Source: Ostrea edulis (Eukaryota). From it: 64,000 nucleotides of DNA. The stretch covers positions 19,902,001 through 19,966,000 of the forward strand of contig NC_079167.1 of assembly GCF_947568905.1 (NCBI RefSeq), written 5' to 3'. Each line of letters starts with the position of its first letter. Position 1 is the stretch's first letter. Position numbers and translations under genes: made by a program. Positions 20,401 through 59,959 of the stretch are shown here, one piece after another. Under the pieces are notes generated by a model. The model saw nothing but the letters and a program-made list of their open reading frames with translations, was not told the DNA's origin and did not search any database.

Positions 20401-20877
20401 TCGTGGACATCATTCATAAAAATATTGATTCCTACAAGTTTTCAATGGCTACTGGAGGAAAAGTCGGAAGTTTTTGTGTACAAAAATCAAAGATGCTGAA
20501 TTTTCTTGTAAACTGGATTCCCGTTTCGTTATGAATTTTGTTTTCAATTTTAGTGACGCTTACAAAGAAATACTGTCTTAATTACGTCGTGATCTTCGTT
20601 ACTACTGATTTAAAGGTTTAATATAATAGATCAAGGTCGAACTTGGATATAGGTTACTTTTCACAAAGATCTGCGTTAATTCTCAAGGTTAAATCAATGG
20701 TGGTATATTTGTCATTGGTGTAGACTCCAAAAAATCCATATGTATAAGATATTCAGTGTTTCCATTGGCATTTGAAGACATGTTATCTCACACAAGCACA
20801 TTGGTTCCTGATTTTGTCTTGGTTTAAAGGTCAAACAACATGGTAACTGGAGCGATCCGTGGTCCGAGGTCAAAACA

Positions 20878-20910
<33 letters not shown>

Positions 20911-21291
20911 GGGGGTAGGTAAAATTTTGAACTAGAAAGGTACCATTCGGCGCGGACATCCATGAAAATTGTAGTTTTTAAAGTGAATTAACCACTTTGT
21001 TGTTATATGCCAAATAAACATAATGGACTTACTCCTTCTAGACGCCTGACCCCACTTTTTAAAATAAATTCTGCTTCATAGCAATAAATCGAAGTTATGG
21101 CAAAACGTATGTTGATGTTTTAAGACATGTACGTCATTTAATTTTCCTGAAAGTTTCTACTACATGAAATACCTTTGCATGCAACATTGTCGGTAATATT
21201 AAATACGTGTAAGCAAGTGACTAATCCACATGTTCAAAAAATGTTCATTTTTAACCTGGAGTTTAAATAGTAGTAAAAAACCCAACGTGTT

Positions 21292-21336
<45 letters not shown>

Positions 21337-21856
21337 TGTTTCCCAGAACTCATACAGTTTACCCAATAGACAAATCATCTTTTGGAAGATGATTGATGGT
21401 GTCCTGTAGATGTGCAATGTGGTTTCAGGAATTTCATTTTCACCCTGGGGGCCAATTAAGGGTTGAAAAACGTTTCAAATGCTTCTAATAGGCTTTTGTA
21501 CTCACCTATAAGTCATTAATCAAATATATATGATCTTCCCCTCCTGCTCCCACTGGGTTTCTCGCCGTTTCTGTTCCGATGCGAGTACTTTACCATAACG
21601 ACTTGCTCCGACCATAAGGACTTGCTCCGTTTAAAAACAATTGTAAAAAAGATACTATCTTTTAAAATGTAGCATTGTTTACTATTTTCTACGGCATCAA
21701 GTCCTCGTGTTCCAACGTAAATATTAGTAAAAGTATTAAATAAAATAATAACATGTGATAACAACTTTCAATGCTTGAAAAACTTTAAAAAAAATTTCAT
21801 TTAATATTATATTTTAGATACAATGTACTTTATCATGAATTCTTACCGTGGCAGTT

Positions 21857-23338
21857 TTACTTAAGTGACACGACACTTATGGGGTACCACCCATACTGTT
21901 TCCTTGATAATCTATTTCTTCGCGTCCAACCATACGCAAATCGTTCCTCGGTACCTCCCATTACTCCCATTGTTTGTTTTATAACTTGTCCTTTTTTAAG
22001 ATCAAGTTCTTTGCTACTTCTAGCTTTGTAACGTGTCGTAGCAATAACTCGGATGTTACGCATTGTACCAATATCGTCGTTCATCTCTGAATAATCTCCT
22101 TCCGCTTGTCTGCAGGGATCGTTGTCTTTAATTGTCTTAGTTGGTTCTGCCTTATCAACACAAAATTCTTTGACGGGGAATGGACTTGGCAGACGACAAG
22201 ATGATTCGCCTGGTAGTTTTATTGTTTCTATATCATCTTCATGATATTCAGTCACTAACGATGAAGGTAATTTCATAATTAGTGGGCTTCTCAGAACTGT
22301 ATCATAATTGGGAAACGTGGCTGTTGTGTTTTGGGCACCGTGAGGGCTATTTTTCTGTGGTGGATTTTGCTGCTGATGGGATGTAGAAGGATGTGATGGG
22401 ACCATTTGTCTCTTACTGGTCTTTGTTCCCTCCTCTTTAACATTCTCCGTGTGCACAGAAGGATTAGTCACTAAAAATACATCAATCCCCGTACCGAGCC
22501 CCGCCTTCTTAAGTCTAGCCCTTTCTTCTGTTTGAATCCAGTTCTGATTATGAATTGAAAGAATATCAATCTCTTGTTGGTTTTGGAAGCATTCAAATGT
22601 CTCACGTGCATTTTCACGAATGAGGTCATATTGCGGAACGATATTTTTCACATACTGTAAAATCACATCAGGAATCCTACTAAACCTGCTTTTGTCTAAT
22701 TCCTTGAGTTCCCGAAACATCATCTGAAGGGTTTTCTTCTTACTAATGATTAAAGACTGTAACTTTGCCTCATCTTCAATACATAATGCAGAACATGTTT
22801 CAATGTGTTTTCGGATATCAGACATCTCTGTGTTCCAGGAATCTAACTTACGCGCGCTCTTGGCAGAATGTCTTTTCCTGTTCTTGGAAAGCTTTCCTTC
22901 CAACTTGATTAAAAGGGCTTTCATGTTGTCTATTGAGTGCTTCTGTTTCATGAGAGCGTTTTCCAGATTTTCCCGCTGTGTGTTGTACGATTTAAATTCT
23001 TCTTCTATTTCTGTCAATCTTTCCTTTTCCAGTCGGGTGTGTTGTAGGACTTTCTGATAGGGGCCACTACTGGCCATGAGTTTATCATAGATGTTTCTAT
23101 GAATTTCTGTCAAGGGGTCTTCATCCCCAGACGAGGGTGATTGGAATAGATTGCCGCCAACATTTTTAAGCAATTCATTTGGATAGCCTTTCCTCCAATT
23201 TTCAATCTCTTGCACATAGGTTAATTTTGCTTCAGCGCGAATCTGTATTATCCGACCTACAGTCTCCTGTAGATGAATAGTGTGTTTGTTTTGCTTAATA
23301 GCTTCTTCTACCAAATAAAAATCAATGGTATCAGCCAT
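21857..23338 (-). CDS. Intronless F-BAR + SH3 protein (divergent PACSIN/syndapin-like), 493 aa, copy 1
   Basis: Uninterrupted ORF with good start context (accATGg). RAEAKLTYVQEIENWRK resembles the FCH motif RA-x-IEK-x-Y-x-QQL-x-EW; LTEIH and MMFRELKELDKSRF resemble PACSIN F-BAR segments. C-terminal SH3-like domain (ATTRY...ELDLKKGQVI...GWYP). Confidence 0.85.
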   Translation of the reverse strand: MADTIDFYLVEEAIKQNKHTIHLQETVGRIIQIRAEAKLTYVQEIENWRKGYPNELLKNVGGNLFQSPSSGDEDPLTEIHRNIYDKLMASSGPYQKVLQHTRLEKERLTEIEEEFKSYNTQRENLENALMKQKHSIDNMKALLIKLEGKLSKNRKRHSAKSARKLDSWNTEMSDIRKHIETCSALCIEDEAKLQSLIISKKKTLQMMFRELKELDKSRFSRIPDVILQYVKNIVPQYDLIRENARETFECFQNQQEIDILSIHNQNWIQTEERARLKKAGLGTGIDVFLVTNPSVHTENVKEEGTKTSKRQMVPSHPSTSHQQQNPPQKNSPHGAQNTTATFPNYDTVLRSPLIMKLPSSLVTEYHEDDIETIKLPGESSCRLPSPFPVKEFCVDKAEPTKTIKDNDPCRQAEGDYSEMNDDIGTMRNIRVIATTRYKARSSKELDLKKGQVIKQTMGVMGGTEERFAYGWTRRNRLSRKQYGWYPISVVSLK

Positions 23339-23445
23339 GGTTAACAGCCAATCGGGTTAACAGCAACACTAGTTGACTAATGGTGACGAAACATAATTAT
23401 GACGTAGAACTATCTATGACGTCAGTCTCATAAATTGAACATTCG

Positions 23446-23527
23446 TAGTCTGGTCCCCGCCTCCGCCACTCATTGATCATTGGTTATTGGGAATGATCAA
23501 TGAGTGGCGGGGGCGGGGACCAGACTA
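23446..23527. promoter_or_regulatory. 36-bp-arm palindrome with GC boxes upstream of the F-BAR/SH3 ORF, with a nearby CRE (TGACGTCA at ~23418)
   Basis: tagtctggtccccgcctccgccactcattgatcatt, loop, aatgatcaatgagtggcgggggcggggaccagacta; probably MITE-derived. Confidence 0.55.
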
Positions 23528-25016
23528 ACGAATAGTAAGCAAACGAACTCTGGCGGAAGTTTGATGTTTTTTTTATGTCAAAATTATCAATATGGTAGCA
23601 CTCGCGCCGTTTTATATATAAACACTTTACTATATAAGGTTACATATCAATTTGACAGACATTTTATATTCTATCCATTTCAATATCAATCTTTTAAAAT
23701 GCGATTTATTAAATATAGACCATAAAATAGCTTGAATATTCACATATTTATTTATATGGTATGCATGTGTTCATATGGTACGTGTGGTTATTTTTAATTG
23801 TATATACTATAAATATGCTGTCTCGAACACTTAGGGTATAAGACTGCCAGTCTCATTGACTTGGCTCAGGCAACACTCCTTGGTATACCCGCTGTGTTTG
23901 TGAAACATTTTATAATATTGTTTTACTTTACTTCCCATATAGCACACTTGTAGAGCACACTTTCAATCAGTATTGTGATGAGCCAATTCAATACATATAT
24001 GTCAATGTAGAATGTAAATAGTGCACATGTGTATATTGTATCATGTAGTTATAATGTTTTTAAACAAAACTGTTAGAATTATATATGCCCCCTGAGGCAT
24101 CTTGATTAATGAATAAATAAGATAAAAATATATTTACATAAATATTGTATGTAGACAGGTAGGCCTAACGAAAGCGTGGTATATTGTTTAACGTCCCGTT
24201 CGAGAATCTTTCACTCCTATGGAGATGTTCATGGGAAATCTTATTCAACCTTGGCATGTCAAGTCGTTTTTCGGGGGGTGGGGGTGATAGAAGTAGTAGG
24301 AAGTTCACTCGTATAAGATTATTGACAAGCAAAACAAATAAAAATTGCGGGGGGAGGGGGGATTTAAGTTCCTCATCAGCTTTAACTGCTTCAATTTTCC
24401 ATCAGTCTTCGATATCTTAAATTGGGGGAAGGAGGTCATCCTTCACTACAATTCAATTTTTGAATTCATAACTTTCAAGCGAGCTTACATTCTTCTCATT
24501 CATCTGATAATAAAACGGCTGTGTACATCTAATATCCACTTATAACATTCAAGATATCGCTAGAACAAAGCACGGTTACAGCTAAGATGATTGATCAATT
24601 CGTTTCTGTTGTGAACATCGCGACATACGATCGCGGAGAGTGAATATTGTGTACTTTTCCCAAATCTTTCTTAGTGCCCGACCCGATTCTTATTGTCCGA
24701 CCCGATTCTTAGTATTCGGTTTTTAGTGTTCGAATACCCGGCGTGGTTATTACGGATTTGTAAATGATACTACGAACAAGATGTACAGGAAAATAGTATA
24801 TGCTACGCATGCTATACATTTTCCCCTGCCCCTTAAAGATCGACTTTGAAATCGCTCCACCAGAGATTGAAAAAATACGAGAAATTGCATTGCTTAGTCT
24901 TTGAACTACACGAACAAAATTCTTGAAATAGAGTTGGTCCGGATAATTCCACACATTGTGGTAATTAAAATAAAAAAAAAAAAACAGACTTGCAGCATAT
25001 AGACAAAAAACAAAAC

Positions 25017-25060
<44 letters not shown>

Positions 25061-25692
25061 CAAGAAGACATAAGTTGCAATCTAATTAATTAAAAGAGAG
25101 TGTTACACCGAAGCGGGAATGTTCCCTAATCATGGCGTATTTGCCTTTTAAATACCTGTAGGATTCCCCAGTACTAGGGGCAAGCCTAATACATTTTAGT
25201 GTCAATACAATATACATGTGGTCTAAACATAATTTTTGAAAATTAAAATGTCTTTTTTCCCCCCTGAGTATCAGATACAATGTATATGGTTATACATGTT
25301 ACGAGTGTATCAAATATTTAATATTCTGTACTACTACAGTCTAAAAGCTCTTACATGTACACTCTATGTATCATAATTCGACTACAACCAACAGTTGGCA
25401 ACTGTACATAACTCTGACCTCAAAACAAAATATGGGAAGTTTATTGTGCATTAATAAAATTCAACATACATGTACATGTAATTCGAAGTACATGCACCTG
25501 ATAACATTGATTCACCATTATAGCAATTTGCTACTGGAATACATATCATCTTATCCACTCAAACTGTTTGACGGTTATTTACCTTGTTTGGCCTTAAAGT
25601 TTTGGAAAGTTCACAACGGTTTTTCATAAAATGCACCATGCCTTTGTCAACACCTTTCACTCAGAAAAACACACAAGTTCTTGTTATTTTTT

Positions 25693-26110
25693 TTTATATT
25701 AGAAGATCTATTTGTAAGTTACGGATATCAGCTCATAAATTAATGATTGAAGTTGGTAGATATTCTGGATGACTAGGAATGAACGAATATGTAACAAATG
25801 CAACTCCGGTTTATTAGGTGATGCGATTCATTTTTTGATTAAATGTGAAAAGTTTGTTGATGAAAGAAAATCTTTTTGTGGTGCTATAGAAAAAACAGTT
25901 AAATTTTTTACCAAACTCAATAATGAACAAAAATTCATTTACATACTATGTTTTGAAGAGCCATCTATTCTAAATATAACTGGAAAATTTATTTTGAACA
26001 ATATATGACACTGTATTTGTATATAACTATGTGTTATGTAATCACTTCTTTCTTTACTTGTATATATATATGTACATTATTTGTATGTATTTGAGGGCCC
26101 TTGATTGGAA
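25693..26110 (+). mobile_element. Non-LTR retrotransposon 3' fragment (C-terminal CCHC region), frameshifted
   Basis: RRSICKLRISAHKLMIEVGRY.../RNERICNKCNSGLLGDAIHFLIKC is a typical LINE ORF2 C-terminal zinc-knuckle motif. Confidence 0.75.
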
Positions 26111-26657
26111 AATAAAATGTTCTAATGTTAGCAACCTTGACTATTAACACACAAGTACCTCATGCTGTATTCGGTGTGTTTGTTGCGAGTCCTGTTCCCA
26201 AACTAAACAGTGTCCAGGTTGGAAGCTTATTACAAACTCGACACATTGTGATAAACAGAGATAATGTAGTGGAAATTTAAAACCGATGAATTGAAATAAA
26301 CGATCAACCATTATCCCCTACCCCAAAAACTTAGGATTTAAAGGTTTGATTTCATTTCTAAATTTTGTAAGATAAGAATTTTCAGACAAATGTAAAACCA
26401 ACTTCTCCGACTGCCCCCTTACAATACACGATGCAATACAACGCGCCTGATTATATTTATAACATCACATGATCTCTCCAGGTGTCTGTTTTTCTTCCCT
26501 AGATTACTTCTAAAATTCTCGGGATTCATTGTATTACAACTTGGACAGAAATAGTAATAAAATACGGCTGTAACCCCCTCCCCCTTTCCCCACCCCTATG
26601 TATATACAGGCGCGGATCTAGAAAATGTTGGGGGAGTGAAAGTGTATGCTCTTCTTT

Positions 26658-26725
26658 CAAACTTCCACCAGAGTTCGTTTGCCCACATTCGTAGGTGACG
26701 TAATGAGGCCTCGACGGGGAGTTTG
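26658..26725. mobile_element. 68-bp MITE with CAAACT...AGTTTG termini and 10-bp TSD; arm 1 only
   Basis: TSD gctcttcttt at 26648-26657 and 26726-26735; arm 2 has a single copy of it (~53415-53430). Confidence 0.8.
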
Positions 26726-26877
26726 GCTCTTCTTTCAGAGAATATCTAAGCGTCACTGAATATTATAACGTCACAATGTACAGCACGTCATAATGTCTAC
26801 GACGTAACACATTCACCCTTGCGACTAAACATAAACATGCTTGCTTGGAGGCGATACGTTCGATAAAAGTAACGCAA

Positions 26878-27765
26878 ATGGAAAATCAAAAGATGATTTC
26901 TGTAAAAGTTTTCCGTTCTATGGCAGACAACAAGGATTTGGAAAATGACTTTGTACCTTATGAACAGGTTAAGGACACCATCTCGAAAATTGAAGTTTTA
27001 AAAGCTGCAAATGCAAATGTCTCTTCATTCCTGCCTTCATGGGCTGACGATGAATATTTCATGCAGTTACACATGCCGAAGAAAATAAAGAAGAGAAATG
27101 TGTTTGAGACAAGTATGGAGACTGGAGAGGCAGTGCTGGAGAAAAAATCAGAAGACAAGACAACCATTGAGAGCGGACGGACAATACTGAATTATGCAAA
27201 GAACGGACGAATCACACATTCTGTTCCTGAGATCAGTGGCGAAGAACTTGATATGAAAACAGAGGATGTCGCAGCATATATCCTGAACATTGTCGAAAAG
27301 GCATGTGCAATAGATCTCCAAGATACAACATCCCAGAAACTAGACCAGGATGACGGCAGAGTTATGGTAGAAACAAAACACGTGAACACTTCAGATGCGA
27401 GTCAGGAAATGAAAAATGAGTGTCTACAGAAACCTGTTAAATTACAAGAATTAAAACAGAAAACCAAGCCATCCAAAAGTGGATTGGACAAACCCGGAGC
27501 GCTTACTGCATTAGAAACAGGGAAAATACCAAAGTTTATTCCCCGAAAGCTGTTTCTATCCAGTTTAGAAACCTTTAAACTTGCACCAGATACCCAGGAT
27601 TCCACCAAGAACAAAGAAGAGAAGACCAAACCCATGAAACCAAGGCCTTTACCGAGTAGTTTCCTCTGCACCACGGGACTTTCTCCTGCGGAAGAACCCC
27701 GTGTGGCGAGATCGCGGAGAACATGGAGGGATCGCATTCTCAGGTTTCTTGGATTTAAAAGATAG
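26878..27765 (+). CDS. Intronless uncharacterised protein, 295 aa from the first in-frame ATG (306 from TTG 26845), copy 1
   Basis: Long ORF kept open in both arms; good start context (caaATGg); K/E-rich, probably disordered; ends RRTWRDRILRFLGFKR. No family recognised. Confidence 0.7.
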   Translation: MENQKMISVKVFRSMADNKDLENDFVPYEQVKDTISKIEVLKAANANVSSFLPSWADDEYFMQLHMPKKIKKRNVFETSMETGEAVLEKKSEDKTTIESGRTILNYAKNGRITHSVPEISGEELDMKTEDVAAYILNIVEKACAIDLQDTTSQKLDQDDGRVMVETKHVNTSDASQEMKNECLQKPVKLQELKQKTKPSKSGLDKPGALTALETGKIPKFIPRKLFLSSLETFKLAPDTQDSTKNKEEKTKPMKPRPLPSSFLCTTGLSPAEEPRVARSRRTWRDRILRFLGFKR

Positions 27766-27816
27766 ACATTCTGAAAATTATGGAGATAGAAACGTGATTT
27801 TAAAGGATTTTTTGCA

Positions 27817-28136
27817 TTTTACAAACGTATTACATGTATGTTGATGGTGTTCTGATATGTTGGTACTTTACAAACGTATTATGTATGTTGATGGTGTTCT
27901 GATATGTTGGTACTTTACAAACGTATTATGTATGTTGATGGTGTTCTGATATGTTGGTACTTTACAAACGTATTATGTATGTTGATGGTGTTCTGATATG
28001 TTGGTACTTTACAAACGTATTATGTATGTTGATGGTGTTCTGATATGTTGGTACTTTACAAACGTATTATGTATGTTCATGGTGTTCTGATATGTTGGTA
28101 CTTTACAAACGTGTTATGTATGTTCATGGTGTTCTA
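27817..28136. repeat. 47-bp tandem repeat, ~7 copies, downstream of the orphan ORF
   Basis: Unit tttacaaacgtattatgtatgttgatggtgttctgatatgttggtac; arm 2 counterpart at ~51950-52320. Confidence 0.93.
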
Positions 28137-28677
28137 ATGTGGATTAAATTTGTTTTCTAACTGTTATACCTCTTGATTGTCCTCATTCTCACTCTAATAC
28201 TGTGAAGCATTATGACGTCAGCACAATCATCTAAATTTAGTTAACAAATGGTGTACATGAGGCGGGCACTAAACAAAACTTTCCAAGTATTTAATGAATA
28301 TAAAAGGAGCAAAAATCACCATTTTTGTATGACATATGACAAGATGTGTGTGTGCGTGTGTGTATGTGTGTGTCATTAAAATGTAACGTTTACATTTGTT
28401 CAAATTGTCTTAACCAATGCTTCTTGACAACACAATTATTAGCTGCTCAGGTGAGCCATAAGGCCCGTGGACCTATTTACTGATCTTACAAAATTGAATG
28501 CCTTTTGTTCATTATGTCATATTAAAAGAAAACATTAGTGCAACACTTATTCGGGCTAGCCATCAGACTATTTGATATGTTCTAAAGCACACACCAACGC
28601 ACACATGTGTGTATATATAATTGGAAATTACTTCTATAGTTGTTGCTGCAAAACCATCCACTTTTGGAATCTCAGAT

Positions 28678-28915
28678 TTTACATCATTAGTGGCCAAGAG
28701 GGTACTTATTTACATCATTAGTGGCCAAGAGGGTACTTATTTACATCATTAGTAGCCAAGAGGGTACTTATTTACATCATTAGTGGCCAAGAGGGTACTT
28801 ATTTACATCATTAGTGGCCAAGAGGGTACTTATTTACATCATTAGTGGCCAAGAGGGTACTTATTTACATCATTAGTGGCCAAGAGGGTACTTATTTACA
28901 TCATTAGTGGACGTG
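28678..28915. repeat. 32-bp tandem repeat, ~7 copies (~5 in arm 2)
   Basis: Unit tacatcattagtggccaagagggtacttattt. Confidence 0.93.
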
Positions 28916-29080
28916 GATCTTGACCATTAATGATATAATTTTTGAATTATATCATTAGTGGACGGTAGGGTAGTATGCTAATGGTATAATTATATCATTA
29001 GTGGTCAGGATCCTGACCACTAATGTAACTTTATATCATTAGTGGGTATTGTAGCATTAATGGTTACTACACACATTTTC

Positions 29081-29365
29081 TAGAATATCAAGTTTCTGTT
29101 AGAATATCAAGTTTCTGTTAGAATGTCACGTTTCTGTTAGAATGTCACGTTTCTGTTAGAATATCACGTTTCTGTTAGAATATCACGTTTCTGTTAGAAT
29201 ATCACGTTTCTGTTAGAATATGAAGTTTCTGTTAGAATATCACGTTTCTGTTAGAATATCAAGTTTCTGTTAGAATATCACGTTTCTGTTAGAATATCAC
29301 GTTTCTGTTAGAATATCACGTTTCTGTTAGAATATCAAGTTTCTGTTAGAATATCAAGTTTCTGT
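29081..29365. repeat. 19-bp VNTR, 15 copies (one copy in arm 2)
   Basis: Unit tagaatatcacgtttctgt; 285 bp = 15 x 19. Confidence 0.95.
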
Positions 29366-29633
29366 TAGAAACACATGTCTATGGTCCACGTATTGCAGCC
29401 CTTTTTTAAAGGACAGCAACTTGGGTTTTTTCCACAATTACTCTATATAGGCCTAACTGGTTTAATTTTGTCGATCTACTGCACAACCCACAATCTGTGC
29501 CAACCAAGGGGGGGGGGGGGGGGGGGGGGAACCCAAAACGGGCTTAGCTAGCCCCTGTGGAGCAAACGGCCGATCTCCTGCACAATCATTTTATTTATAT
29601 CAAATTTCTTGAAAAAAGTGACAATTCAGTCCT

Positions 29634-29913
29634 CAGGGCCGTAACTGCCGATGAGGCAGACGAGGCAACTGCCTCGTCTGATTTTTTGGCAAAAAAGAAA
29701 ATAAAATTATATAAATGTTATATTATAGGATATATGTTTAAAATGAAGACAAGCACCTTTGTCTTTGACACCATATTACGATTCTTTACATAGTACAAAT
29801 GAAACACAAACATGATAAATTGGGATTTAAAAAGTGTCATTTTCAGTCGTAAAGTCAATCGGCGGCCCCCAATCCCCTGCCTCCCCTGATTTAGAACCCT
29901 ACTTACGGCCCTG
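29634..29913. mobile_element. 280-bp MITE with CAGGGCCGTAA TIR and 5-bp TSD (GTCCT); arm 1 only
   Basis: TSD at 29629-29633 and 29914-29918; empty site with a single GTCCT in arm 2 (aggac at 50653-50657). Confidence 0.92.
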
Positions 29914-30428: not shown

Positions 30429-30444
30429 ACTTCCGGTGCACGTG
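30429..30444 (+). promoter_or_regulatory. TBL3 proximal promoter motifs: ETS site plus E-box
   Basis: ACTTCCGGT (ETS/GABP-type) and CACGTG 50-65 nt upstream of the inferred ATG, as is typical of housekeeping promoters. Confidence 0.5.
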
Positions 30445-30494
30445 TTGTACAGAATGATGTACAGGAAAGAAAGCTGATAGTCTTATATGAAGTC

Positions 30495-48843: not shown

Positions 48844-48882
48844 CTGTTAAATGGATTTTATGAATTGAATGAATTCTAAAAT

Positions 48883-49630: not shown

Positions 49631-49672
49631 GACTTCATATAAGACTATCAGCTTTCTTTCATGTACATCATT

Positions 49673-50121: not shown

Positions 50122-51000
50122 GTATATCATTCTGTACAACACGTGCACCGGAAGTTTCCAAACATTTCCAAAGGGCACTAACTCTGTATTATCAATTAGG
50201 GGGGGGGGGGGTGCAGACGAATGATTGAAAGAAAACTGAGAAAAAGTTATAAAAAAGGATTATTTTTTTTTAAGCGAAAAAAGAAATTTCAAGAGAAAAA
50301 ATCTTTCAAAATGCGAAGAAAATAAATTTAAAGATCTATATTAAAACCATTTCAAGAAACTTCTATGAGAAAAACTGTATCGATCTTTAATATCAAATTC
50401 ATCTCGCACATGAATATAAATATCTGGGAATTATTTGCACTTGTAACGGTAAACTTGGATATGCAGCTGAACAGCTATCTGACACAGGCATAAGAAGTAA
50501 CGGATACAACTACACCCACCCACCCCACCCTCTGGCTTTTTTTTTTTTTTTTTGCTGCCGCTGCGATGTGTGGATTCAATCGAAATACACACAGGCAACA
50601 AATAAAATGTACTTAACACCGCCCTTGGCTATCTTGTCCTGTAAAGAGTGACAGGACTGAATTGTCACATTTTTCAAGAAATTTGATATAAATAAAATGA
50701 TTGTGCAGGAGATCGCCCGTTTGCACCACAGGGGCTAGCTAAGCCCGTTTTGGGTCCCCCCCCCCCCCCCCCCCCCCAAGTGGTTGAGTAAATCAACAAA
50801 ATTAAACCAGTTAGGCCTATATAGAGTAATTGTGGAAAAAACCCAAGTTGCTGTCTTTTAAAAAAGGGCTGCAATGCGTGGACCATAGACATGTCTTTCT
50901 AACAGAAACTTGATATTCTAGGGTGAAAATGTGTGTAGTAACCATTAATGCTACAATATCCACTAATGATATAAAGTTACATTAGTGGTCAGGATCCTGA

Positions 51001-51149
51001 CAATCTGATTAAAATAAGATCTTTGATCCGCTCCGTTATTCCAATCTGATTAAAATAAGATCTTTGATCCGCTCCGTTATTGTTATGTCGCTACACAAAG
51101 CGACATAACAATAACGGAGCGGATCAAAGATCTTATTTTAATCAGATTG
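51001..51149. mobile_element. Foldback MITE (108-bp palindrome plus 41-bp duplicated left arm) with 9-bp TSD GGATCCTGA; arm 2 only
   Basis: TSD at 50992-51000 and 51150-51158; same family as 16412-16512; empty site at 28996-29025. Confidence 0.88.
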
Positions 51150-52381
51150 GGATCCTGACTACTAATGATATAATTATACCATTAGCATACTACCCTACCG
51201 TCCACTAATGATATAATTCAAAGATTATATCATTAATGGTCAAGATCCACGTCCACTAATGATATAAATAAGTACCCTCTTGGCCACTAATGATGTAAAT
51301 AAGTACCCTCTTGGCTACTAATGATGTAAATAAGTACCCTCTTGGCCACTAATGATGTAAATAAGTACCCTCTTGGCCACTAATGATGTAAATAAGTACC
51401 CTCTTGGCCACTAATGATATAAAATCTGAGATTCCAAAAGTGGATGGTTTTGCAGCAACAACTATAGAAGTAATTTTCCATCATATATACACGCATGTGT
51501 GCGTTGGTGTGTGCTTTAGAACATATCAAAGTCTGATGGCTAGCCCGAACAAGTGTTACACTAATGTTTTCTTTTAATATGACATAATGAACAAAAGGCA
51601 TTCAATTTTGTAAGATCAGTAAATACGTCCACGGGCCTTATGTCTCACCTGAGCAGCTAATAATTATGTTGTCAAGAAGCATTGGTTAAGACAATTTGAA
51701 CAAATGTAAACGTTACATTTTAATGACACACACACACATCTTGTCATATGTCATACAAAAATGGTGATTTTTGCTCCTTTTATATTCATTAAATACTTGG
51801 AAAGTTTTGTTTATAGTGCCCGCCTCGAGTACACCATTTGTTAACTTTTAGATGAATGTGCTGACGTCATAATGCTTCACAGTATTAGAGTGAGAATGAG
51901 GACAATCAAGAGGTATAACAGTTAGAAAACAAATTTAATCCACATTAGAACACCATGAACATACATAATACGTTTGTAAAGTACCAACATATCAGAACAC
52001 CATGAACATACATAATACGTTTGTAAAGTACCAACATATCAGAACACCATGATCATACATAATACGTTTGTAAAGTACCAACATATCAGAACACCATGAT
52101 CATACATAATACGTTTGTAAAGTACCAATATATCAGAACACCATGAACATACATAATACGTTTGTAAAGTACCAACATATCAGAACACCATGAACATACA
52201 TAATACGTTTGTAAAGTACCAACATATCAGAACACCATGATCATACATGTAATACGTTTGTAAAGTACCAACATATCAGAACACCACGAACATGCACATA
52301 CATATAATACGTTTGTAAAATGCAAAAAATCCTTTAAAATCATGTTTCTATCTCCATAATTTTCAGAATGTCTATTTTTTT

Positions 52382-53263
52382 TTAAAATCCAAGAAATCTG
52401 AGAATGCGATCCCTCCATGTTCTCCGCGATCTCGCCACACGGGGTTCTTCCGCAGGAGAAAGCCCCGTGGTGCAGAGGAAACTACTCGGTAAAGGCCTTG
52501 GTTTCATGGGTTTGGTCTTCTCTTCTTTGTTCTTGGTGGAATCCTGGGTATCTGGTGCAAGTTTAAAGGTTTCTATACTGGATAGAAACAGCTTTCGGGG
52601 AATAAACTTGGGTATATTCCCTGTTTCTAATGCAGTAAGCTCTCCGGGTTTGTCCAATCCACTTTTGGATGGCTTGGTTTTCTGTTTTAATTCTTGTAAT
52701 TTAACAGGTTTCTGTAGACACTCATTTTTCATTTCCTGACTCGCATCTGAAGTGTTCACATGTTTTGTTTCTACCATAACTCTGCCGTCATCCTGGTCTA
52801 GTTTCTGGGATGTTGTATCTTGGAGATCTATTGCACATGCCTTTTCGACAATGCTCAGGATATATGCTGCGACATCCTCTGTTTTCATCTCAAGTTCTTC
52901 GCCACTGATCTCAGAAACAGAATGTGTGATTCGTCCGTTCTTTGCATAATTCAGTATTGCCCGTCCGCTCTCGATGGTTGTCTTGTCTTCTGATTCTTTC
53001 TCCAGCACTGCCTCTCCAGTCTCCATGCTTGCCTCAAACACATTTCTCTTCTTTATTTTCTTCGGCATGTGTAACTGCACGAAATATTCATCGTCAGCCC
53101 ATGACGGCAGGAATGAAGAGACATTTGCATTTGCAGCTTTTAAAACTTCAATTTTCGAGATGGTGTCCTTAACCTGTTCATAAGGTACAAAGTCATTTTC
53201 CAAATCCTTGTTGTCTGCCATAGAACGGGAAACTTTTACAGAAATCATCTTTTGATTTTCCAT
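52382..53263 (-). CDS. Intronless uncharacterised protein, copy 2 (293 aa from ATG)
   Basis: Paralog of 26878-27765: 11 amino-acid substitutions, and a stop two codons earlier (ends RFLGF). Confidence 0.7.
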   Translation of the reverse strand: MENQKMISVKVSRSMADNKDLENDFVPYEQVKDTISKIEVLKAANANVSSFLPSWADDEYFVQLHMPKKIKKRNVFEASMETGEAVLEKESEDKTTIESGRAILNYAKNGRITHSVSEISGEELEMKTEDVAAYILSIVEKACAIDLQDTTSQKLDQDDGRVMVETKHVNTSDASQEMKNECLQKPVKLQELKQKTKPSKSGLDKPGELTALETGNIPKFIPRKLFLSSIETFKLAPDTQDSTKNKEEKTKPMKPRPLPSSFLCTTGLSPAEEPRVARSRRTWRDRILRFLGF

Positions 53264-54004
53264 TTGCGTTACTTTTATCGAACGTATCGCCTCCAAGCAA
53301 GCGCACAGTATTGTTTATGTTTAGTCGCAAGGGTGAATGTGTTACGTATTACACATTATGACGTGCTGTACATTGTGACGTTATAATATTCAATGACGCT
53401 TAGATATTCTCTGAAAGAAGAGCATACACTTTCTCTCCCCCAACATTTTCTAGATCCGCGCCTGTATATATATATAGGGGTGGGGAAAGGGGGAGGGGGT
53501 TACAGCCGTATTTTATTACTATTTCTGTCCAAGTTGTAATACAATGAATCCCGAGAATTTTAGAAGTAATCTAGGGAAGAAAAACAGACACCTGGAGAGA
53601 TCATGTGATGTTATAAATATAATCAGGCGCGTTGTATTGCATCGTTTATTGTAAGGGGGCAGTCAGAGAAGAAGTTGGTTTTACATTTGTCTGAAAATTC
53701 TTATCTTACAAAATTTAGAAATGAAATCAAACCTTTAAATCCTAAGTTTTTGGGGTAGGGGATAATGGTTGATCGTTTTTTTCAATTCATCGGTTTTAAA
53801 TTTCCACTACATTATCTCTGTTTATCACAATGTGTCGAGTTTGTAATAAGCTTCCAACCTGGACACTGTTTAGTTTGGGAACAGGACTCGCAACAAACAC
53901 ACCGAATACAGCATGAGGTACTTGTGTTTTAATAGTCAAGGTTGCTAACATTAGAACATTTTATTTTCCAATCAAGGGCCCTCAAATACATACAAATAAT
54001 GTAC

Positions 54005-54342
54005 TATAGGATTAAACATTCTTTTGGAAGAATTTATCGATGTGTAAACTCCGGACATTTTACTCACAAACTGAATAAAAGTGCGAAGCACTTTTATGTT
54101 AAGTTTGTGAGTAAAATATCCGGAGTTTACACATCGATAAATTCTTCCAAAAGAATGTTTGATTCTTATAATTCCAATTCATTGACTTTATTAACAATTG
54201 CAAAAATTTGAATAGTTACCCGCACTATGTTGTTTGTTTTCAGGCGTGTATGAATACATCGCGTTTTCGGATTTATTGATGTGTAAACTCTTGTTCAGCT
54301 TTATTTTTGTCCAATCAAAACAATTGTAATAAATAAGATTGG

Positions 54343-54350
<8 letters not shown>
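54005..54350. mobile_element. Arm-2-only insertion: ~165-bp palindrome plus a 184-bp element with tataattccaat TIRs
   Basis: 54014-54084 and 54088-54160 are near-perfect inverted arms; absent at the arm-1 site (~26060-26072). Confidence 0.75.
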
Positions 54351-54387
<37 letters not shown>

Positions 54388-54472
54388 AGTAAAGAAAGAA
54401 GTGATTACATAACACATAGTTATATACAAATACAGTGTCATATATTGTTCAAAATAAATTTTCCAGTTATAT

Positions 54473-54770
54473 TTAGAATAGATGGCTCTTCAGAACATAG
54501 TATGTAAATGAATTTTTGTTCATCATTGAGTTTGGTAAAAAAAAATTAACTGTTTTTTCTATAGCACCACAAAAAGATTTTCTTTCATCAACAAACTTTT
54601 CACATTTAATCAAAAAATGAATCGCATCACCTAATAAACCGGAGTTGCATTTGTTACATATTCCTTCATTCCTAGTAATACCAGAATATCTACCAACTTC
54701 AATCATTAATTTATGAGCTGATATCCGTAACTTACAAATAGATCTTCTAATATAAAAAAATAACAAGAAC
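54473..54770 (-). mobile_element. Non-LTR retrotransposon 3' fragment, arm-2 copy
   Basis: RRSICKLRISAHKLMIEVGRYSGITRNEGICNKC...HFLIKC. Confidence 0.75.
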
Positions 54771-55397
54771 TTGTATGTTTTTCTGAGTGAAAGGTGTTGA
54801 CAAAGGCATGGTGCATTTTACGAAAAACCGTTGTGAACTTTCCAAAACTTTAAGGCCAAACAAGGTAAATAACCGTCAAACAGTTTGAGTGGATAAGATG
54901 CTATGTATTCCAGTAGCAAATTGCTATAATGGTGAATCAATGTTATCAGGTGCATGTACTTCGAATTACATGCACATGTATGTTGAATTTTATTAATGCG
55001 CAATAAACTTCCCATATTTTGTTTTGAGGTCAGAGTTATGTACAGTTGCCAACTGTTGGTTGTAGTCGAATTATGATACATAGAGTGTACATGTAAGAGC
55101 TTTTAGACTGTAGTAGTACAGAATATTAAATATTTGATACACTCGTAACATGTATAACCATATACATTGTATCTGATACTCAGGGGGAAAAAAGACAATT
55201 TAATTTTCAAAAATTATGTTTAGACTACATGTATATTGTATTGACACTAAAATGTATTAGGCTTGCCCCTAGTACTGGGGAATCCTACAGGTATTTAAAA
55301 GGCAAATACGCCATGATTAGGGAACATTCCCGCTTAAGTGTAACACTCTCTTTTAATTAATTAGATTGCAACTTATGTCTTCTGGGTTTTTTCTTTG

Positions 55398-55440
<43 letters not shown>

Positions 55441-55913
55441 GTTTTGTTTTTGTCTATATGCTGCAAGTCTGTTTTTTAAAAATTACCACAATGTGTGGAA
55501 TTATCCGGACCAACTCTATTTCAAGACTTGTTCGTGTAGTTCAAAGACTAAGCAATGCAATTTCTCGTATTTTTTCAATCTCTGTTGGAGCGATTTCAAA
55601 GTCGATCTTTAAGGGGCAGTGGAAAATGTATAGTATGTGTAGCATATACTATTTTCCTGTACATCTTGTTCGTAGTATCATTTACAAATCCGTAATAACC
55701 ACGCCGCGTATTCGAACACTAAAAACCGAATACTAAGAATCGGGTTGGACAATAAGAATCGGGTCAGGCACTAAGAAAGATTTGGGAAAAGTACACAATA
55801 TTCACTCCCCGCGATCGTATGTCGCGATGTTCACAACAGAAACGAATTGATCAATCATCTTAACTGTAACCGTGCTTTGCTCTAGCGATATCTTGAATGT
55901 TATAAGTGGATAT

Positions 55914-56047
55914 CAGGGGATGCTTACTCCTCCTAGGCACCTGATCCCACCTCTGGTGTGTCCAGGGGTCCGTGTTTGCCCAACTATCTATTTTGTATTG
56001 CTTGTAGGAGTTATGAGATTGATCACTGTTCGTTATCTTCACCTTGC
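55914..56047 (-). mobile_element. 134-bp fragment of a common oyster repeat; arm 2 only
   Basis: Reverse complement of the 63710-63860 family; replaces 3 nt (tag) of the arm-1 site at ~24527-24531. Confidence 0.8.
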
Positions 56048-57082
56048 ATGTACACAGCCGTTTTATTATCAGATGAATGAGAAGAATGTAAGCTCGCTTG
56101 AAAGCTATGAATTCAAAAATTGAATTGTAGTGAAGGATGACCTCCTTCCCCCAATTTAAGATATCGAAGACTGATGGAAAATTGAAGCAGTTAAAGCTGA
56201 TGAGGAACTTAAATCCCCCCTCCCCCCGCAATTTTTATTTGTTTTGCTTGTCAATAATCTTATACGAGTGAACTTCCTACTACTTCTAACACCACCACCA
56301 CCACCACCCCTCCCCTCACCCCCCCCCCCCCCCCGAAAAACGACTTGACATGCCAAGGTTGAATAAGATTTCCCATGAACATCTCCATAGGAGTGAAAGA
56401 TTCTCGAACGGGACGTTAAACAATATACCACGCTTTCGTTAGGCCTACCTGTCTACATGCAATATTTATGTAAATATATTTTTATCTTATTTATTCATTA
56501 ATCAAGATGCCTCAGGGGGCATATATAATTCTAACAGTTTTGTTTAAAAACATTATAACTACATGATACAATATACACATATGCACTATTTACATTCTAC
56601 ATTGACATATATGTATTGAATTGGCTCATCACAATACTGATTGAAAGTATGCTCTACAAGTGTGCTATATGGGAAGTAAAGTAAAACAATATTATAAAAT
56701 GTTTCACAAACACAGCGGGTATACCAAGGAGTGTTGCCTGAGCCAAGTCATTGAGACTGGCAGTCTTATACCCTAAGTGTTCGAGACAGCATATTTATAG
56801 TATATACAATTAAAAATAACCACACGTACCATATGAACACATGCATACCATATAAATAAATATATGTGAATATTCAAGCTATTTTATGGTCTGTATTTAA
56901 TAAATCGCATTTTAAAAGATTGATATTGAAATGGATAGAATATAAACTGTCTGTCAAATTGATAAGTAACCTTATATAGTAAAGTGTTTTTATATAAAAC
57001 GGCGCGAGTGCTACCATATTGATAATTTTGATATAAAAAAACCCATCAAACTTCCGCCAGAGTTCGTTTGCTTACTATTCGT

Positions 57083-57164
57083 TAGTCTGGTCCCCGCCCC
57101 CGCCACTCATTGATCATTCCCAATAAGGAATGATCAATGAGTGGCGGGGGCGGGGACCAGACTA
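57083..57164. promoter_or_regulatory. Perfect 38-bp-arm palindrome with GC boxes upstream of F-BAR/SH3 copy 2
   Basis: tagtctggtccccgcccccgccactcattgatcattcc, loop caataa, ggaatgatcaatgagtggcgggggcggggaccagacta. Confidence 0.55.
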
Positions 57165-57271
57165 CGACTGATCAATTTATGAGACTGACGTCATAGATAG
57201 TTCTACGTCATAATTATATTTTGTCACAATTAGTCAACTAGTGTTGCTGTTAACCCGATTGGCTGTTAACC

Positions 57272-58750
57272 ATGGCTGATACCATTGATTTTCATTTGGT
57301 AGAAGAAGCTATTAAGCAAAACAAACACACTATTTATCTACAGGAGGCTGTAGGTCGGATAATACAGATTCGCGCTGAAGCAAAATTAACCTATGTACAA
57401 GAGATTGAAAATTGGAGGAAAGGCTATCCAAATGAATTGCTTAAAAATGTTGGCGGCAATCTATTCCAATCACCCTCGTCTGGGGATGAAGACCCCTTGA
57501 CAGAAATTCATAGAAACATCTATGATAAACTCATGGCCAGTAGTGGCCCCTATCAGAAAGTCCTACAACACACCCGACTGGAAAAGGAAAGATTGACAGA
57601 AATAGAAGAAGAATTTAAATCGTACAACACACAGCGGGAAAATCTGGAAAACGCTCTCACGAAACAGAAGCACTCAATAGACAACATGAAAGCCCTTTTA
57701 ATCAAGTTGGAAGGAAAGCTTTCCAAGAACAGGAAAAGACAGTCTGCCAAGAGCGCGCGTAAGTTAGATTCCTGGAACACAGAGATGTCTGATATCCGAA
57801 AACACATTGAAACATGTTCTGCATTATGTATTGAAGATGAGGCAAAGTTACAGTCTTTAATCATTAGTAAGAAGAAAACCCTTCAGATGATGTTTCGGGA
57901 ACTCAAGGAATTAGACAAAAGCAGGTTTAGTAGGATTCCTGATGTGATTTTACAGTATGTGAAAAATATCGTTCCGCAATATGACCTCATTCGTAAAAAT
58001 GCACGTGAGGCATTTGAATGCTTCCAAAACCAACAAGAGATTGATATTCTTTCAATTCATAATCAGAACTGGATTCAAACAGAAGAAAGGGCTAGACTTA
58101 AGAAGGCGGGGCTCGGTACGGGGATTGATGTATTTTTAGTGACTAATCCTTCTGTGCACTCGGAGAATGTTAAAGAGGAGGGAACAAAGGCCAGTAAGAG
58201 ACAAATGGTCCCATCACATCCTTCTACACCCCATCGGCAGCAAAATCCACCACAGAAAAATAGCCCTCACAATGCCCAAAACACAACAGCCACGTCTCCC
58301 AATTATGATACAGTTCTGAGAAGCTCACTAATGATGAAATTACCCTCATCGTTAGTGACTGAATTTCATGAAGATGATGTAGAAACAATAAAACTACCAG
58401 GCGAATCATCTTGTCGTCTGCCAAGTCCATTCCCCGTCAAAGAATTTTGTGTTGATAAGGCAGAACCAACTAAGACAATTAAAGACAACGATCCCTGCAG
58501 AAAAGCAGGAGATTATTTAAAGATGAACGACGATATTGGTGGAATGCGTAACATCCGAGTTATTGCTACGACACGTTACAAAGCTCGAAGTAGCAAAGAA
58601 CTTGATCTTAAAAAAGGACAAGTTATAAAACAAACAATGGGAGTAATGGGAGGTACCGAGGAACGATTTGCGTATGGTTGGACGCGAAGAAATAGATTAT
58701 CAAGGAAACAGTATGGGTGGTACCCCATCAGCGTCGTGTCACGCAAGTAA
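57272..58750 (+). CDS. Intronless F-BAR + SH3 protein (divergent PACSIN/syndapin-like), 492 aa, copy 2
   Basis: Paralog of 21857-23338: 22 amino-acid substitutions and one in-frame codon deletion; SH3 core identical at the protein level. Confidence 0.85.
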   Translation: MADTIDFHLVEEAIKQNKHTIYLQEAVGRIIQIRAEAKLTYVQEIENWRKGYPNELLKNVGGNLFQSPSSGDEDPLTEIHRNIYDKLMASSGPYQKVLQHTRLEKERLTEIEEEFKSYNTQRENLENALTKQKHSIDNMKALLIKLEGKLSKNRKRQSAKSARKLDSWNTEMSDIRKHIETCSALCIEDEAKLQSLIISKKKTLQMMFRELKELDKSRFSRIPDVILQYVKNIVPQYDLIRKNAREAFECFQNQQEIDILSIHNQNWIQTEERARLKKAGLGTGIDVFLVTNPSVHSENVKEEGTKASKRQMVPSHPSTPHRQQNPPQKNSPHNAQNTTATSPNYDTVLRSSLMMKLPSSLVTEFHEDDVETIKLPGESSCRLPSPFPVKEFCVDKAEPTKTIKDNDPCRKAGDYLKMNDDIGGMRNIRVIATTRYKARSSKELDLKKGQVIKQTMGVMGGTEERFAYGWTRRNRLSRKQYGWYPISVVSRK

Positions 58751-59268
58751 AACTGCCACAGTTAAAATTCATGATAAAGTACATTGTATCTAAAATATAT
58801 TATATGAAAAAAAAAAAAAGTTTTTCAAGCATTGAAAGTTGTTATCACATGTTATTATTTTATTTAATACTTTTACTAATATGTATGTTGGAACACGAGG
58901 ACTTGATGCCGTAAAAAATAGCAAACAATGCTACATTTTAAAAGATAGTATCTTTTTTTACAATTGTTTTTAAACGGAGCAAGTCCCTATGGTCGGAGCA
59001 AGTCGTTATGGTAAAGTACTCGCATCGGAACAGAAACGGCGAGAAACCCAGTGGGAGCAGGAGGGGAAGATCATATATATTTGATTAATGACTTATAGGT
59101 GAGTACAAAAGCCTATTAGAAGCATTTGAAACGTTTTTCAACCCTTAATTGGCCCCCAGGGTGAAAATGAAATTCCTGAAACCACATTGCACATCTACAG
59201 GACACCATCAATCATCTTCCAAAAGATGATTTGTCTATTGGGTAAACTGTATGAGTTCTGGGAAACAG

Positions 59269-59314
<46 letters not shown>

Positions 59315-59959
59315 TATATACACGTTGTTTTTTTTTACTACTATTTAGACTCCAGGTTAAAAATGAACATTTTTTTAACATGTCGATTAATCACTTGATT
59401 ACACGTATTTAATATTACCGACAATGTTGCATGCAAAGGTATTTCATGTAGTAGAAACTTTCAGGAAAATTAAATGACGTACATGTCTTAAAACATCAAC
59501 ATACATTTTACCATAACTTCGATTTATTGCTATGAAGCAGAATTTATTTTTAAAAAAGTGGGGTCAGGCGTCTAGAAGGAGTAAGTCCATTATGTTTATT
59601 TGGCATATAACAACAAAGTGGTTAATTCACTTTAAAAACTACAATTTTTACGGGTGTCCGCGCCGAATGGTACCTTTCTAGTTCAAGTGTTTGACCGGAA
59701 CGTCCATTCTCTCTCTGTGTGTGTGTGTGTTGACCTCGGACCACGGATCGCTCCAGTTACCATGTTGTTTGACCTTTAAACCAAGACAAAATCAGGAACC
59801 AATGTGCTTGTGTGAGATAACATGTCTTCAAATGCCAATGGAAACACTGAATATCTTATTTGATAATACAAAACCGTAAATAACTTTCATGTCAATAAAG
59901 GAAATCTGATGATATTTACAGGATAGGTAGACATTCCAAAAATCTACAGATCGATGTCT

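What the first reader, a model, noticed from the sequence alone, without database searches (positions are those of the whole stretch)
20744..59859. ~10 kb inverted duplication brackets the body of TBL3 and duplicates a two-gene module
Seen: 20744-30647 is the reverse complement of 49483-59859, with sharp breakpoints and no gaps. The 18.8 kb spacer holds TBL3 exons 2-24. By manual count the F-BAR ORFs differ at ~30 of 1479 nt (~2%). Each arm has private TE insertions with TSDs facing empty sites in the other arm (arm 1: 26658, 29634; arm 2: 49673, 51001; plus 54005 and 55914 without clear TSDs), so the copies have separate histories. Inference: a young palindrome-like locus with both copies of both ORFs intact. 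Caveat: ~2% is also in the range of allelic divergence in oysters.
Basis: partly seen in the sequence, partly recalled or inferred. Interest (0 to 1): 0.8.

Follow-up and report, generated by a model that had tools for sequence, protein, structure and literature searches.

The report
Real inverted duplication bracketing oyster TBL3
A 10-kb stretch carrying two small genes and the start of the ribosome-assembly gene TBL3 has been copied in reverse just behind TBL3 in a flat-oyster genome; its inner junction appears in four unrelated oysters, so it is real, but it is an ordinary young segmental duplication in a genome full of them.

Summary
Arm 1 (20744-30647) is the reverse complement of arm 2 (49483-59859), about 97.5% identical where alignable, with sharp ends and no N. 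The arms flank an 18.8-kb spacer that holds the TBL3/UTP13 gene body.

The main doubt was a haplotype mis-assembly. Short-read contigs from four runs in four separate studies each cross the novel inner junction J3 (49482|49483) with 0-1 mismatches. Their k-mer depth matches neighbouring single-copy DNA. The contigs also break exactly at arm-diagnostic sites, as expected when both arm contexts are present. The outer junction J4 could not be tested.

Arm 1 is the parent, because it contains TBL3's promoter and exon 1. Arm 2 is a blunt insertion with no target-site duplication or microhomology, about 2 kb behind TBL3.

- **ORF1:** an intronless PACSIN-like protein. The F-BAR label is supported by fold only, and the SH3 match is subthreshold.
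- **ORF2:** a member of a dispersed, fast-evolving orphan family.

All four ORF copies are intact. Indels are depleted in them, but dN/dS between the ORF1 copies is about 0.9.

The scan has noted similar inverted duplications elsewhere in this genome, and duplications are reported as pervasive in Ostrea edulis. This is a new member of a known kind, of modest interest.

The parts
20744..30647 (.). Arm 1, the parental copy. Holds ORF1 (-), ORF2 (+), the TBL3 promoter region, exon 1 and the first ~130 nt of intron 1.
   Evidence: Exon 1 is contiguous with the TBL3 body.
49483..59859 (.). Arm 2, the derived inverted copy, inserted ~2.1 kb downstream of TBL3's last conserved coding exon.
   Evidence: Junction J3 is crossed by contigs of four independent runs.
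30648..49482 (+). Spacer of 18,835 bp. Holds the TBL3/UTP13 gene body (WD40 exons and Utp13-domain exons at 45729-45980 and 46308-46502) plus ~2 kb of single-copy 3' sequence.
   Evidence: Single-copy depth.
49262..49542 (.). Stretch covered by the J3-bridging contig (junction at 49482|49483) in runs X1, X2, X5 and X7.
   Evidence: table 8: 270-281-nt contigs with 0-1 other letters and depth close to the flanking unique contigs.
59859..59860 (.). Outer junction J4 of arm 2. Blunt, with no TSD. Not tested with reads.
   Evidence: sequence. (pattern scan blank).
21857..23338 (-). ORF1, arm 1: intronless 493-aa PACSIN-like protein with an F-BAR-type fold, a disordered linker and a degenerate SH3.
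57272..58750 (+). ORF1, arm 2: 492 aa, 95% identical to the arm-1 copy.
26845..27765 (+). ORF2, arm 1: orphan protein of 295-306 aa, in a ~1.3-1.6-kb unit (about 26747-28346) that is dispersed in O. edulis.
52382..53296 (-). ORF2, arm 2: 304 aa, 96% identical to the arm-1 copy.
30495..30514 (+). TBL3 exon 1 coding part (MSQLKE.., donor GT at 30515), inside arm 1.
   Evidence: It joins in frame to exon 2 (FAVETKYEPIFTGGK) at about 31634.
49611..49630 (-). Copy of TBL3 exon 1 in arm 2. Keeps the ATG and the GT donor, has one A>G change, and points antisense towards TBL3's 3' end.
49674..50132 (.). Arm-2-private MITE with ~56-nt TIRs and TSD ATCATTC. The family is extremely abundant (k-mer depth about 1e5).
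51002..51149 (.). Arm-2-private foldback MITE with 9-nt TSD GGATCCTGA, facing an empty site in arm 1 at about 29010.
29629..29913 (.). Arm-1-private MITE with TIR CAGGGCCGTAA and TSD GTCCT.
55917..56047 (.). Arm-2-private 131-nt SINE-like insertion with no clear TSD. A 100%-identical copy lies in O. edulis locus L001.

Best explanation
This is a genuine, evolutionarily young inverted segmental duplication in a flat-oyster genome (Ostrea edulis or a very close relative).

The 9.9-kb segment lying just upstream of TBL3/UTP13 was copied. It carries an intronless PACSIN-like gene, an orphan ORF of a dispersed family, the TBL3 promoter, exon 1 and the first ~130 nt of intron 1. The copy was inserted in reverse orientation about 2 kb behind TBL3's last conserved exon.

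Both ends of the insertion are blunt, with no target-site duplication and no microhomology. This points to end-joining or a replication template switch (inferred), not transposition.

Since then the arms have diverged by about 2-2.6% at alignable sites. Each has gained private MITE/SINE insertions and changes in tandem-array length.

The duplication appears fixed or at high frequency: the inner junction is present at single-copy depth in four unrelated individuals.

Inferred consequences, not shown:
- A second copy of each small gene, with ORF1 under relaxed constraint.
- A second TBL3 promoter and exon 1 firing antisense into TBL3's 3' end.
- A substrate for arm-to-arm gene conversion and for recombination that flips the TBL3 body without breaking the gene.
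For: - **Structure in the assembly:**, with no N.
- **Junction J3 crossed:** contigs of 270-281 nt with 0-1 mismatches cross it in X1, X2, X5 and X7 (four studies, four samples). They have 210-220 nt on the TBL3 side and 60 nt on the arm side.
- **Junction depth:** 104/15.2/41.9/45.4, against 77-93/14-15/55-67/47-48 for adjacent unique contigs.
- **Graph forks:** in all four runs that contig ends at 49542, which is the diagnostic site 49512 plus 30. The next contig ends at 49660, just before the diagnostic site 49661. These are k=31 graph forks that a single-locus allelic bubble would not give.
- **Arm-2-specific contigs:** those between 50126 and 50996, where the arms are ~91% alike, match the reference arm 2 at 99% or more in all four runs.
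- **Local allelic difference:** only 3-6 substitutions per 2083 nt in the spacer, about ten times below arm divergence.
- **Polarity:** exon 1 in arm 1 is contiguous with TBL3.
- **Junction type:** blunt.
- **Separate histories:** private TE insertions with TSDs face empty sites.
- **ORF integrity:** indels are depleted in the ORFs, 2 observed against 12.2 expected, P=4.5e-4.
- **Background:** duplications are reported as pervasive in O. edulis (bioRxiv 10.1101/2025.06.24.661118).
Against: - Only J3 was tested.
- All runs were Logan contigs, so there is no true read depth, no long read spanning a whole arm, and no direct sight of the arm-1 path in the same runs. Its presence is inferred from contig breaks.
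- No other assembly or species could be fetched for synteny.
- The template-switch or end-joining mechanism is inferred from the absence of TSD and microhomology alone.
- Species identity rests on similarity to O. edulis loci and on unchecked earlier notes.
Confidence: 0.85

Rival explanations
1. Assembly artefact. Arm 2 is the second haplotype of arm 1 (a haplotig) wrongly placed in inverted orientation behind TBL3, and the true genome has one arm.
For: J4 is untested. No raw-read depth was available.
Against: - J3 exists in four independent short-read data sets at single-copy depth, not half depth.
- There are no N gaps at either junction.
- Contig forks at 49512 and 49661 show two different upstream and downstream contexts in every run.
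- Local allelic divergence is about 0.15-0.3%, far below arm divergence.
Confidence: 0.05
2. Single arm plus an inversion polymorphism. Only one arm exists, and some haplotypes carry the TBL3 body inverted, which also creates a J3-type adjacency. The assembler stitched the two haplotypes into a false palindrome, so J4 would be the artefact.
For: An inversion of the spacer alone next to a single arm yields exactly the J3 adjacency. J4 was not tested.
Against: - Such an inversion would separate exon 1 and the promoter from the body of TBL3/UTP13. From general knowledge this is a conserved ribosome-biogenesis gene.
- J3 is nevertheless at full single-copy depth in 4 of 4 individuals.
- Arm-2-type and arm-1-type states coexist at 49512 and 49661 in every run.
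- Arm 2 carries its own private MITEs and ~9% divergence in the inner part.
Confidence: 0.05
3. Transposon-mediated capture. The 10-kb arm is cargo moved by a Helitron, a giant DNA transposon or alternative transposition, not a plain segmental duplication.
For: The arms are rich in MITEs. ORF2 sits in a dispersed unit. Another inverted duplication in this genome was noted with a breakpoint in a Helitron-type element (unchecked note).
Against: - There is no TSD at 49482/59860.
- The arm ends carry no terminal inverted repeats or Helitron-type termini: the arm starts ATAAGAT and ends AAACGT.
- The copied segment ends inside TBL3 intron 1, not at a TE boundary.
Confidence: 0.05

Closest known systems
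Human Xq28 FLNA-EMD region flanked by large inverted repeats (see bioRxiv 10.1101/2020.04.20.051185 and PMC3961182, found; arm and spacer sizes are from my own knowledge)
   Same: Inverted repeats of roughly 10 kb bracket a unique gene-bearing spacer of tens of kb. That architecture permits recurrent recombination-driven inversion of the spacer without breaking the genes.
   Different: The human arms are more than 99% identical and the inversion polymorphism is demonstrated. Here the arms are about 97.5% identical, one arm contains the bracketed gene's own promoter and exon 1, and no inversion polymorphism has been looked for.
Primate sex-chromosome palindromes maintained by arm-to-arm gene conversion (general knowledge)
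   Same: Gene-bearing inverted arms around a unique spacer, with both gene copies intact. Divergence along the arms is patchy (index of dispersion 3.5), which gene conversion could produce.
   Different: Those arms are typically at least 99.9% identical and much longer. Here divergence is 2-2.6% with many private TE insertions. ORF1 shows dN/dS of about 0.9 between arms, so there is no sign of homogenisation or strong preservation.
Polymorphic segmental duplications in Ostrea edulis (Colston-Nepali et al., bioRxiv 10.1101/2025.06.24.661118)
   Same: Same kind of organism, and a genome in which duplicated segments with paralogous variants are reported as rampant. This locus would generate exactly such paralogous 'SNPs'.
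   Different: That study infers duplications statistically from coverage and finds most at low frequency. Here a specific inverted duplication is resolved to the base and appears present in 4 of 4 individuals.
PACSIN/syndapin F-BAR + SH3 proteins (for ORF1)
   Same: Predicted three-long-helix N-terminal domain whose best structural matches are PACSIN1/2/3 and Drosophila syndapin F-BAR domains. There is a C-terminal SH3-like segment. NCBI names the M. gigas relative PACSIN1.
   Different: There is no significant Pfam FCH/F-BAR hit, and the SH3 is subthreshold in the window copies. The gene is intronless here but multi-exon in M. gigas. It is only 43-54% identical to its nearest relatives.

Membership tests
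Inverted segmental duplication (palindrome with spacer) | Two long arms in inverted orientation with high identity and defined breakpoints | tested here: met
   9.9 and 10.4 kb arms, about 97.5% identity at alignable sites, sharp ends at 20744/59859 and 30647/49483.
Inverted segmental duplication (palindrome with spacer) | Novel junctions of the derived copy exist in independent sequence data | tested here: inconclusive
   J3 is crossed in 4 of 4 runs from 4 studies. J4 was not tested because of the read laying cap, and the pattern scan was blank.
Inverted segmental duplication (palindrome with spacer) | Both copies present in the same haploid genome (copy number 2) | tested here: inconclusive
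   Inferred from contig forks at the diagnostic sites 49512 and 49661, and from single-copy depth of arm-2-specific contigs. No raw-read depth was available.
False duplication of haplotypes (assembly artefact) | No reads cross the junctions of the extra copy, arms at half depth, often N gaps at the joins | tested here: not met
   J3 is crossed at full single-copy depth in four runs. No N in the window.
Transposition or TE-capture product | Target-site duplication and element termini at the ends of the inserted copy | tested here: not met
   no TSD, no TIR or Helitron-type ends, and the breakpoint lies in TBL3 intron 1.
Gene-conversion-maintained palindrome (sex-chromosome type) | Near-identity of the arms (at least 99.9%) despite age, with conversion tracts | tested here: not met
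   Divergence is 2.0-2.6%. The patchiness is significant but could be alignment effects or haplotype mosaic, so conversion is not demonstrated.
TBL3 / UTP13 (spacer gene) | WD40 repeats followed by a Utp13 C-terminal domain | tested here: met
   Utp13 (PF08625) scores 39.5 and 59.9 bits on two exons against a cut-off of 25.9. WD40 is above cut-off on several exons.
PACSIN/syndapin (ORF1) | N-terminal F-BAR domain | tested here: inconclusive
   There is no Pfam FCH hit and no PDB sequence hit. The AlphaFold model's confident helices match PACSIN F-BAR structures first (E 1e-4, TM by target about 0.5).
PACSIN/syndapin (ORF1) | C-terminal SH3 domain | tested here: inconclusive
   SH3_1/SH3_2 reach E of 0.04-0.05 in the window copy, below cut-off. 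The relatives P0001 and P0003 pass (27.5 and 28.5 bits against 21.8). The model is of low confidence there.

The most novel reading that the evidence does not exclude
The inverted arms form a selectively kept, recombining palindrome. Arm-to-arm gene conversion preserves two fast-evolving intronless genes. The mirrored TBL3 promoter and exon 1 make the architecture invariant to recombination-driven flipping of the essential TBL3 body, and also provide a convergent antisense promoter that tunes TBL3 expression. This would be a mollusc counterpart of primate X/Y palindromes with a built-in regulatory twist.
Probability: 0.1. Interest if true: 0.55.

Novelty: new member of a known kind. Interest (0 to 1): 0.35.

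Why it matters
It shows, at base resolution and with independent population data, that at least one of the large gene-bearing inverted repeats in this oyster assembly is real and not a haplotig artefact.

That matters in three ways:
- **Trust in the assembly.** Other inverted duplications noted in this genome could not be confirmed by the earlier follow-ups.
- **Population genomics.** The arms will produce paralogous pseudo-SNPs of the kind reported as widespread in O. edulis.
- **A concrete test locus.** It can be used to test for inversion polymorphism, gene conversion and antisense transcription around an essential gene.

Biologically it is an ordinary young segmental duplication. No function is shown.

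Tried and rejected
- **Exact-sequence look-ups.** Look-ups of both ORF1 and both ORF2 products in public assemblies were all blank, so there is no second assembly of the locus.
- **O. edulis and M. gigas relatives of ORF1.** The loci L001 and L002 are not syntenic: the neighbours are RPL10 and CLN3, with no TBL3. They are paralogous or rearranged loci and give no empty-site information.
- **O. edulis relatives of ORF2.** The loci L003-L005 are dispersed copies. I rejected the idea that two of them on one chromosome were the equivalent arms, because they lie 35 Mb apart.
- **J4 pattern scan.** An exact 40-nt J4 pattern in metagenome contigs found nothing.
- **R-flank gene for synteny.** Only short Logan fragments turned up, plus one 81.8-kb ENA contig whose DNA is not held.
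- **Continuation of the short ORF cut by J3 (49327-49518).** Read across arm 2 into 59860, it runs into a stop after 7 codons (sequence), so there is no support for a split gene.
- **Big representative-protein search.** It would only have served synteny.
- **MAFFT global alignment.** It is unreliable across the tandem arrays at 28678-29370, where it gave an apparent 28% mismatch. I excluded that stretch from the statistics.
Full report
**1. The observation**

The repeat finder and BLAST recover a colinear chain of inverted matches. The window contains no N. Arm 1 is 9,904 bp, arm 2 is 10,377 bp, and the spacer (30648-49482) is 18,835 bp.

Over the well-aligned outer 7.7 kb, substitutions are 2.03% in ORF1, 2.06% in ORF2 and 2.61% in non-coding DNA. 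The inner ~700 bp is only 91-95% identical. Chance cannot produce a 10-kb match of this quality.

**2. What the parts are**

*Spacer.* Stop-to-stop frames in the spacer on the + strand carry WD40 repeats. Two exons match the Utp13 domain above Pfam's cut-off (45729-45980 and 46308-46502). The spacer gene is therefore TBL3/UTP13. I did not verify the exon count.

*TBL3 exon 1.* It has its ATG at 30495 and its donor GT at 30515. It joins in frame to FAVETKYEPIFTGGK at about 31634, and it lies inside arm 1, 130 nt from the arm's inner end. Arm 1 is therefore the parental copy. Arm 2 carries a copy of the promoter region and exon 1 (49630-49611, - strand) that keeps the ATG and the donor.

*ORF1* (21857-23338 -, 57272-58750 +; 493 and 492 aa; 95% identical):
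- It has no significant Pfam or PDB-sequence match.
- Its oyster relatives carry a C-terminal SH3 above threshold.
- An AlphaFold model built from the family alignment gives three long, confident helices. Its best 48 Foldseek matches are all F-BAR domains, with PACSIN/syndapin first.
- The M. gigas relative is multi-exon over 8.7 kb, while the window copies and the O. edulis relative are intronless. ORF1 is therefore probably a retrogene (inference).

*ORF2* (26845-27765 +, 52382-53296 -):
- It is an orphan by Pfam.
- It has three O. edulis relatives at 74-78% aa identity. They sit in unrelated neighbourhoods and share a ~1.3-kb DNA unit with common limits. ORF2 is thus a dispersed family and not a locus-specific gene.

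**3. Real or artefact**

This was the crux. Arm 2 creates two novel adjacencies, J3 (49482|49483) and J4 (59859|59860).

The look-up of sequencing runs returned only Logan contigs. Seventeen DNA runs held at least half of the sampled words, and the listed holders came from nine studies in all. I laid four runs from four studies on 47400-51000.

- **Junction crossed.** In every run one contig of 270-281 nt lies on 49262/49273-49542 with 0-1 mismatches. It has 210-220 nt on the TBL3 side and 60 nt on the arm side.
- **Depth.** That contig's mean k-mer depth is 104/15.2/41.9/45.4. The adjacent unique contigs show 77-93/14-15/55-67/47-48. The junction is therefore not at half depth.
- **Real reads cross J3.** The spacer end and the arm share no 30-mer, so a k=31 contig can cross J3 only if real reads do.
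- **Fork at 49512.** In all four runs this contig ends at 49542, exactly 30 nt after 49512. That is the first site at which the arms differ (T against C).
- **Fork at 49661.** The next contig (49513-49660) ends just before the diagnostic site 49661.
- **What the forks mean.** An allelic variant 29 nt inside J3 would form a closed bubble and be popped. An unclosed fork means the alternative state has a different upstream context, which is what the arm-1/intron-1 path predicts (inference).
- **Interior sites.** The interior diagnostic sites (49548, a 5-nt indel, 49612) form a closed bubble. X1, X2 and X7 kept the arm-2 branch and X5 kept the arm-1 branch.
- **Arm-2-specific sequence.** All four runs nevertheless yield contigs at least 99% identical to the reference arm 2.
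- **Local allelic difference.** In the spacer it is 3-6 substitutions per 2083 nt, about ten times below arm divergence.

I conclude that the inner junction and inner part of arm 2 are real and common, probably fixed. J4 and full arm continuity remain untested, because read laying was capped at one call and the pattern scan was blank.

**4. Mechanism**

The arm-2 insertion site shows no target-site duplication, no microhomology and no element termini. The copied segment ends inside TBL3 intron 1. I therefore favour a non-homologous event, either end-joining of a copied fragment or a replication template switch, which is the usual source of inverted duplications. This is inference.

After the event each arm gained private insertions. 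Three are clear MITEs with TSDs facing empty sites (49674-50132, 51002-51149, 29629-29913). Tandem arrays also changed length.

**5. Selection on the copies**

- Between arms, dN/dS is 0.90 for ORF1 (24 non-synonymous, 7 synonymous) and 0.42 for ORF2.
- Over the longer term, ORF1 against its O. edulis relative gives 0.35, and the ORF2 family gives 0.42-0.69.
- The non-synonymous excess in ORF1 over the long-term expectation has P=0.015. This suggests relaxed constraint after duplication.
- Indel events are depleted in the ORFs, with 2 observed (one of them in-frame) against 12.2 expected, P=4.5e-4. Frameshifts have been avoided, although the lower indel-proneness of coding sequence may contribute.
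- Divergence is over-dispersed along the arms (index 3.5, P about 3e-12). This is compatible with gene conversion, haplotype mosaicism or local misalignment, and it stays unresolved.

**6. Context and novelty**

Earlier notes of this scan call the genome the European flat oyster and list several other inverted duplications in it. Two follow-ups could not confirm theirs with reads. I did not verify the species beyond two observations:
- 82-89% DNA identity of the ORF2 unit to O. edulis paralogues.
- A 131-nt SINE-like insert 100% identical to an O. edulis copy.

A recent preprint reports pervasive, mostly low-frequency duplications in O. edulis. The architecture resembles the human FLNA-EMD inverted-repeat region and sex-chromosome palindromes, but without their near-identity.

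This is a new member of a known kind. It is useful as a validated case and as a test locus, but it is not surprising.

Noticed in passing
window 26747-28346 and 51737-53402; L003 9926-11188, L004 9985-11235, L005 9888-11041: The ORF2-bearing unit is a dispersed ~1.3-1.6-kb family in O. edulis with shared 5' and 3' limits. Clusters of ACGTCA/TGACGTCA (CRE-like) motifs sit at both ends, and no poly-A or TIR was seen. dN/dS is 0.4-0.7 among copies, yet all five ORFs are intact. Its mode of spread is unexplained.
   Followed up: partly
window 21857-23338 vs L002 10001-18721: ORF1 is intronless here and in O. edulis (L001). Its M. gigas relative, named PACSIN1, is split into at least 7 exons over 8.7 kb, which suggests ORF1 is a retrogene.
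   Followed up: partly
window 46706-47356 (+), array 46814-47342: The last conserved TBL3 exon (ERHFQRMNRLLQQAMFLEFTW) continues in frame through a 28-bp x 19 tandem array to a stop at 47357. The TBL3 C-terminal tail may therefore be encoded by a minisatellite, unless a donor is used before it.
   Followed up: no
window 47495, 48230, 48563: All four laid runs read C where the window has T at these three spacer sites. These are reference-private alleles or consensus errors.
   Followed up: no
window 49674-50132: This MITE family has summed k-mer depth of 5e4-2e5 in runs whose single-copy depth is 15-90, so there are thousands of copies. Many internally deleted variants skip about 366-392 nt.
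   Followed up: no
window 49327-49518 (+): A short ORF (MARFASTTDADIEQLLEDRNRKNTNHVISMSVKIIRSYL) is cut by J3. It has a faint match to a tyrosine-recombinase core-binding domain (MrpR_N_CB, E 0.078). It may be a remnant of a Crypton-like or recombinase-derived sequence at the insertion site.
   Followed up: partly
window 62134-63188 (-): The right flank holds probable exons of an unnamed conserved gene with no Pfam hit. Fragments 82-87% identical occur in Logan contigs of relatives. The gene is convergent with TBL3, so arm 2 was inserted between two 3' ends.
   Followed up: partly
window 9948-10217 (+): The left flank holds the last exon of an amiloride-sensitive sodium channel (ASC, PF00858) gene.
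   Followed up: no
window 26648-26725 vs L005 about 9800-9900: The same spot just upstream of ORF2 carries different small insertions in arm 1 and in the O. edulis copy L005. Arm 2 and L004 have none there. This is a possible insertion hot spot.
   Followed up: no
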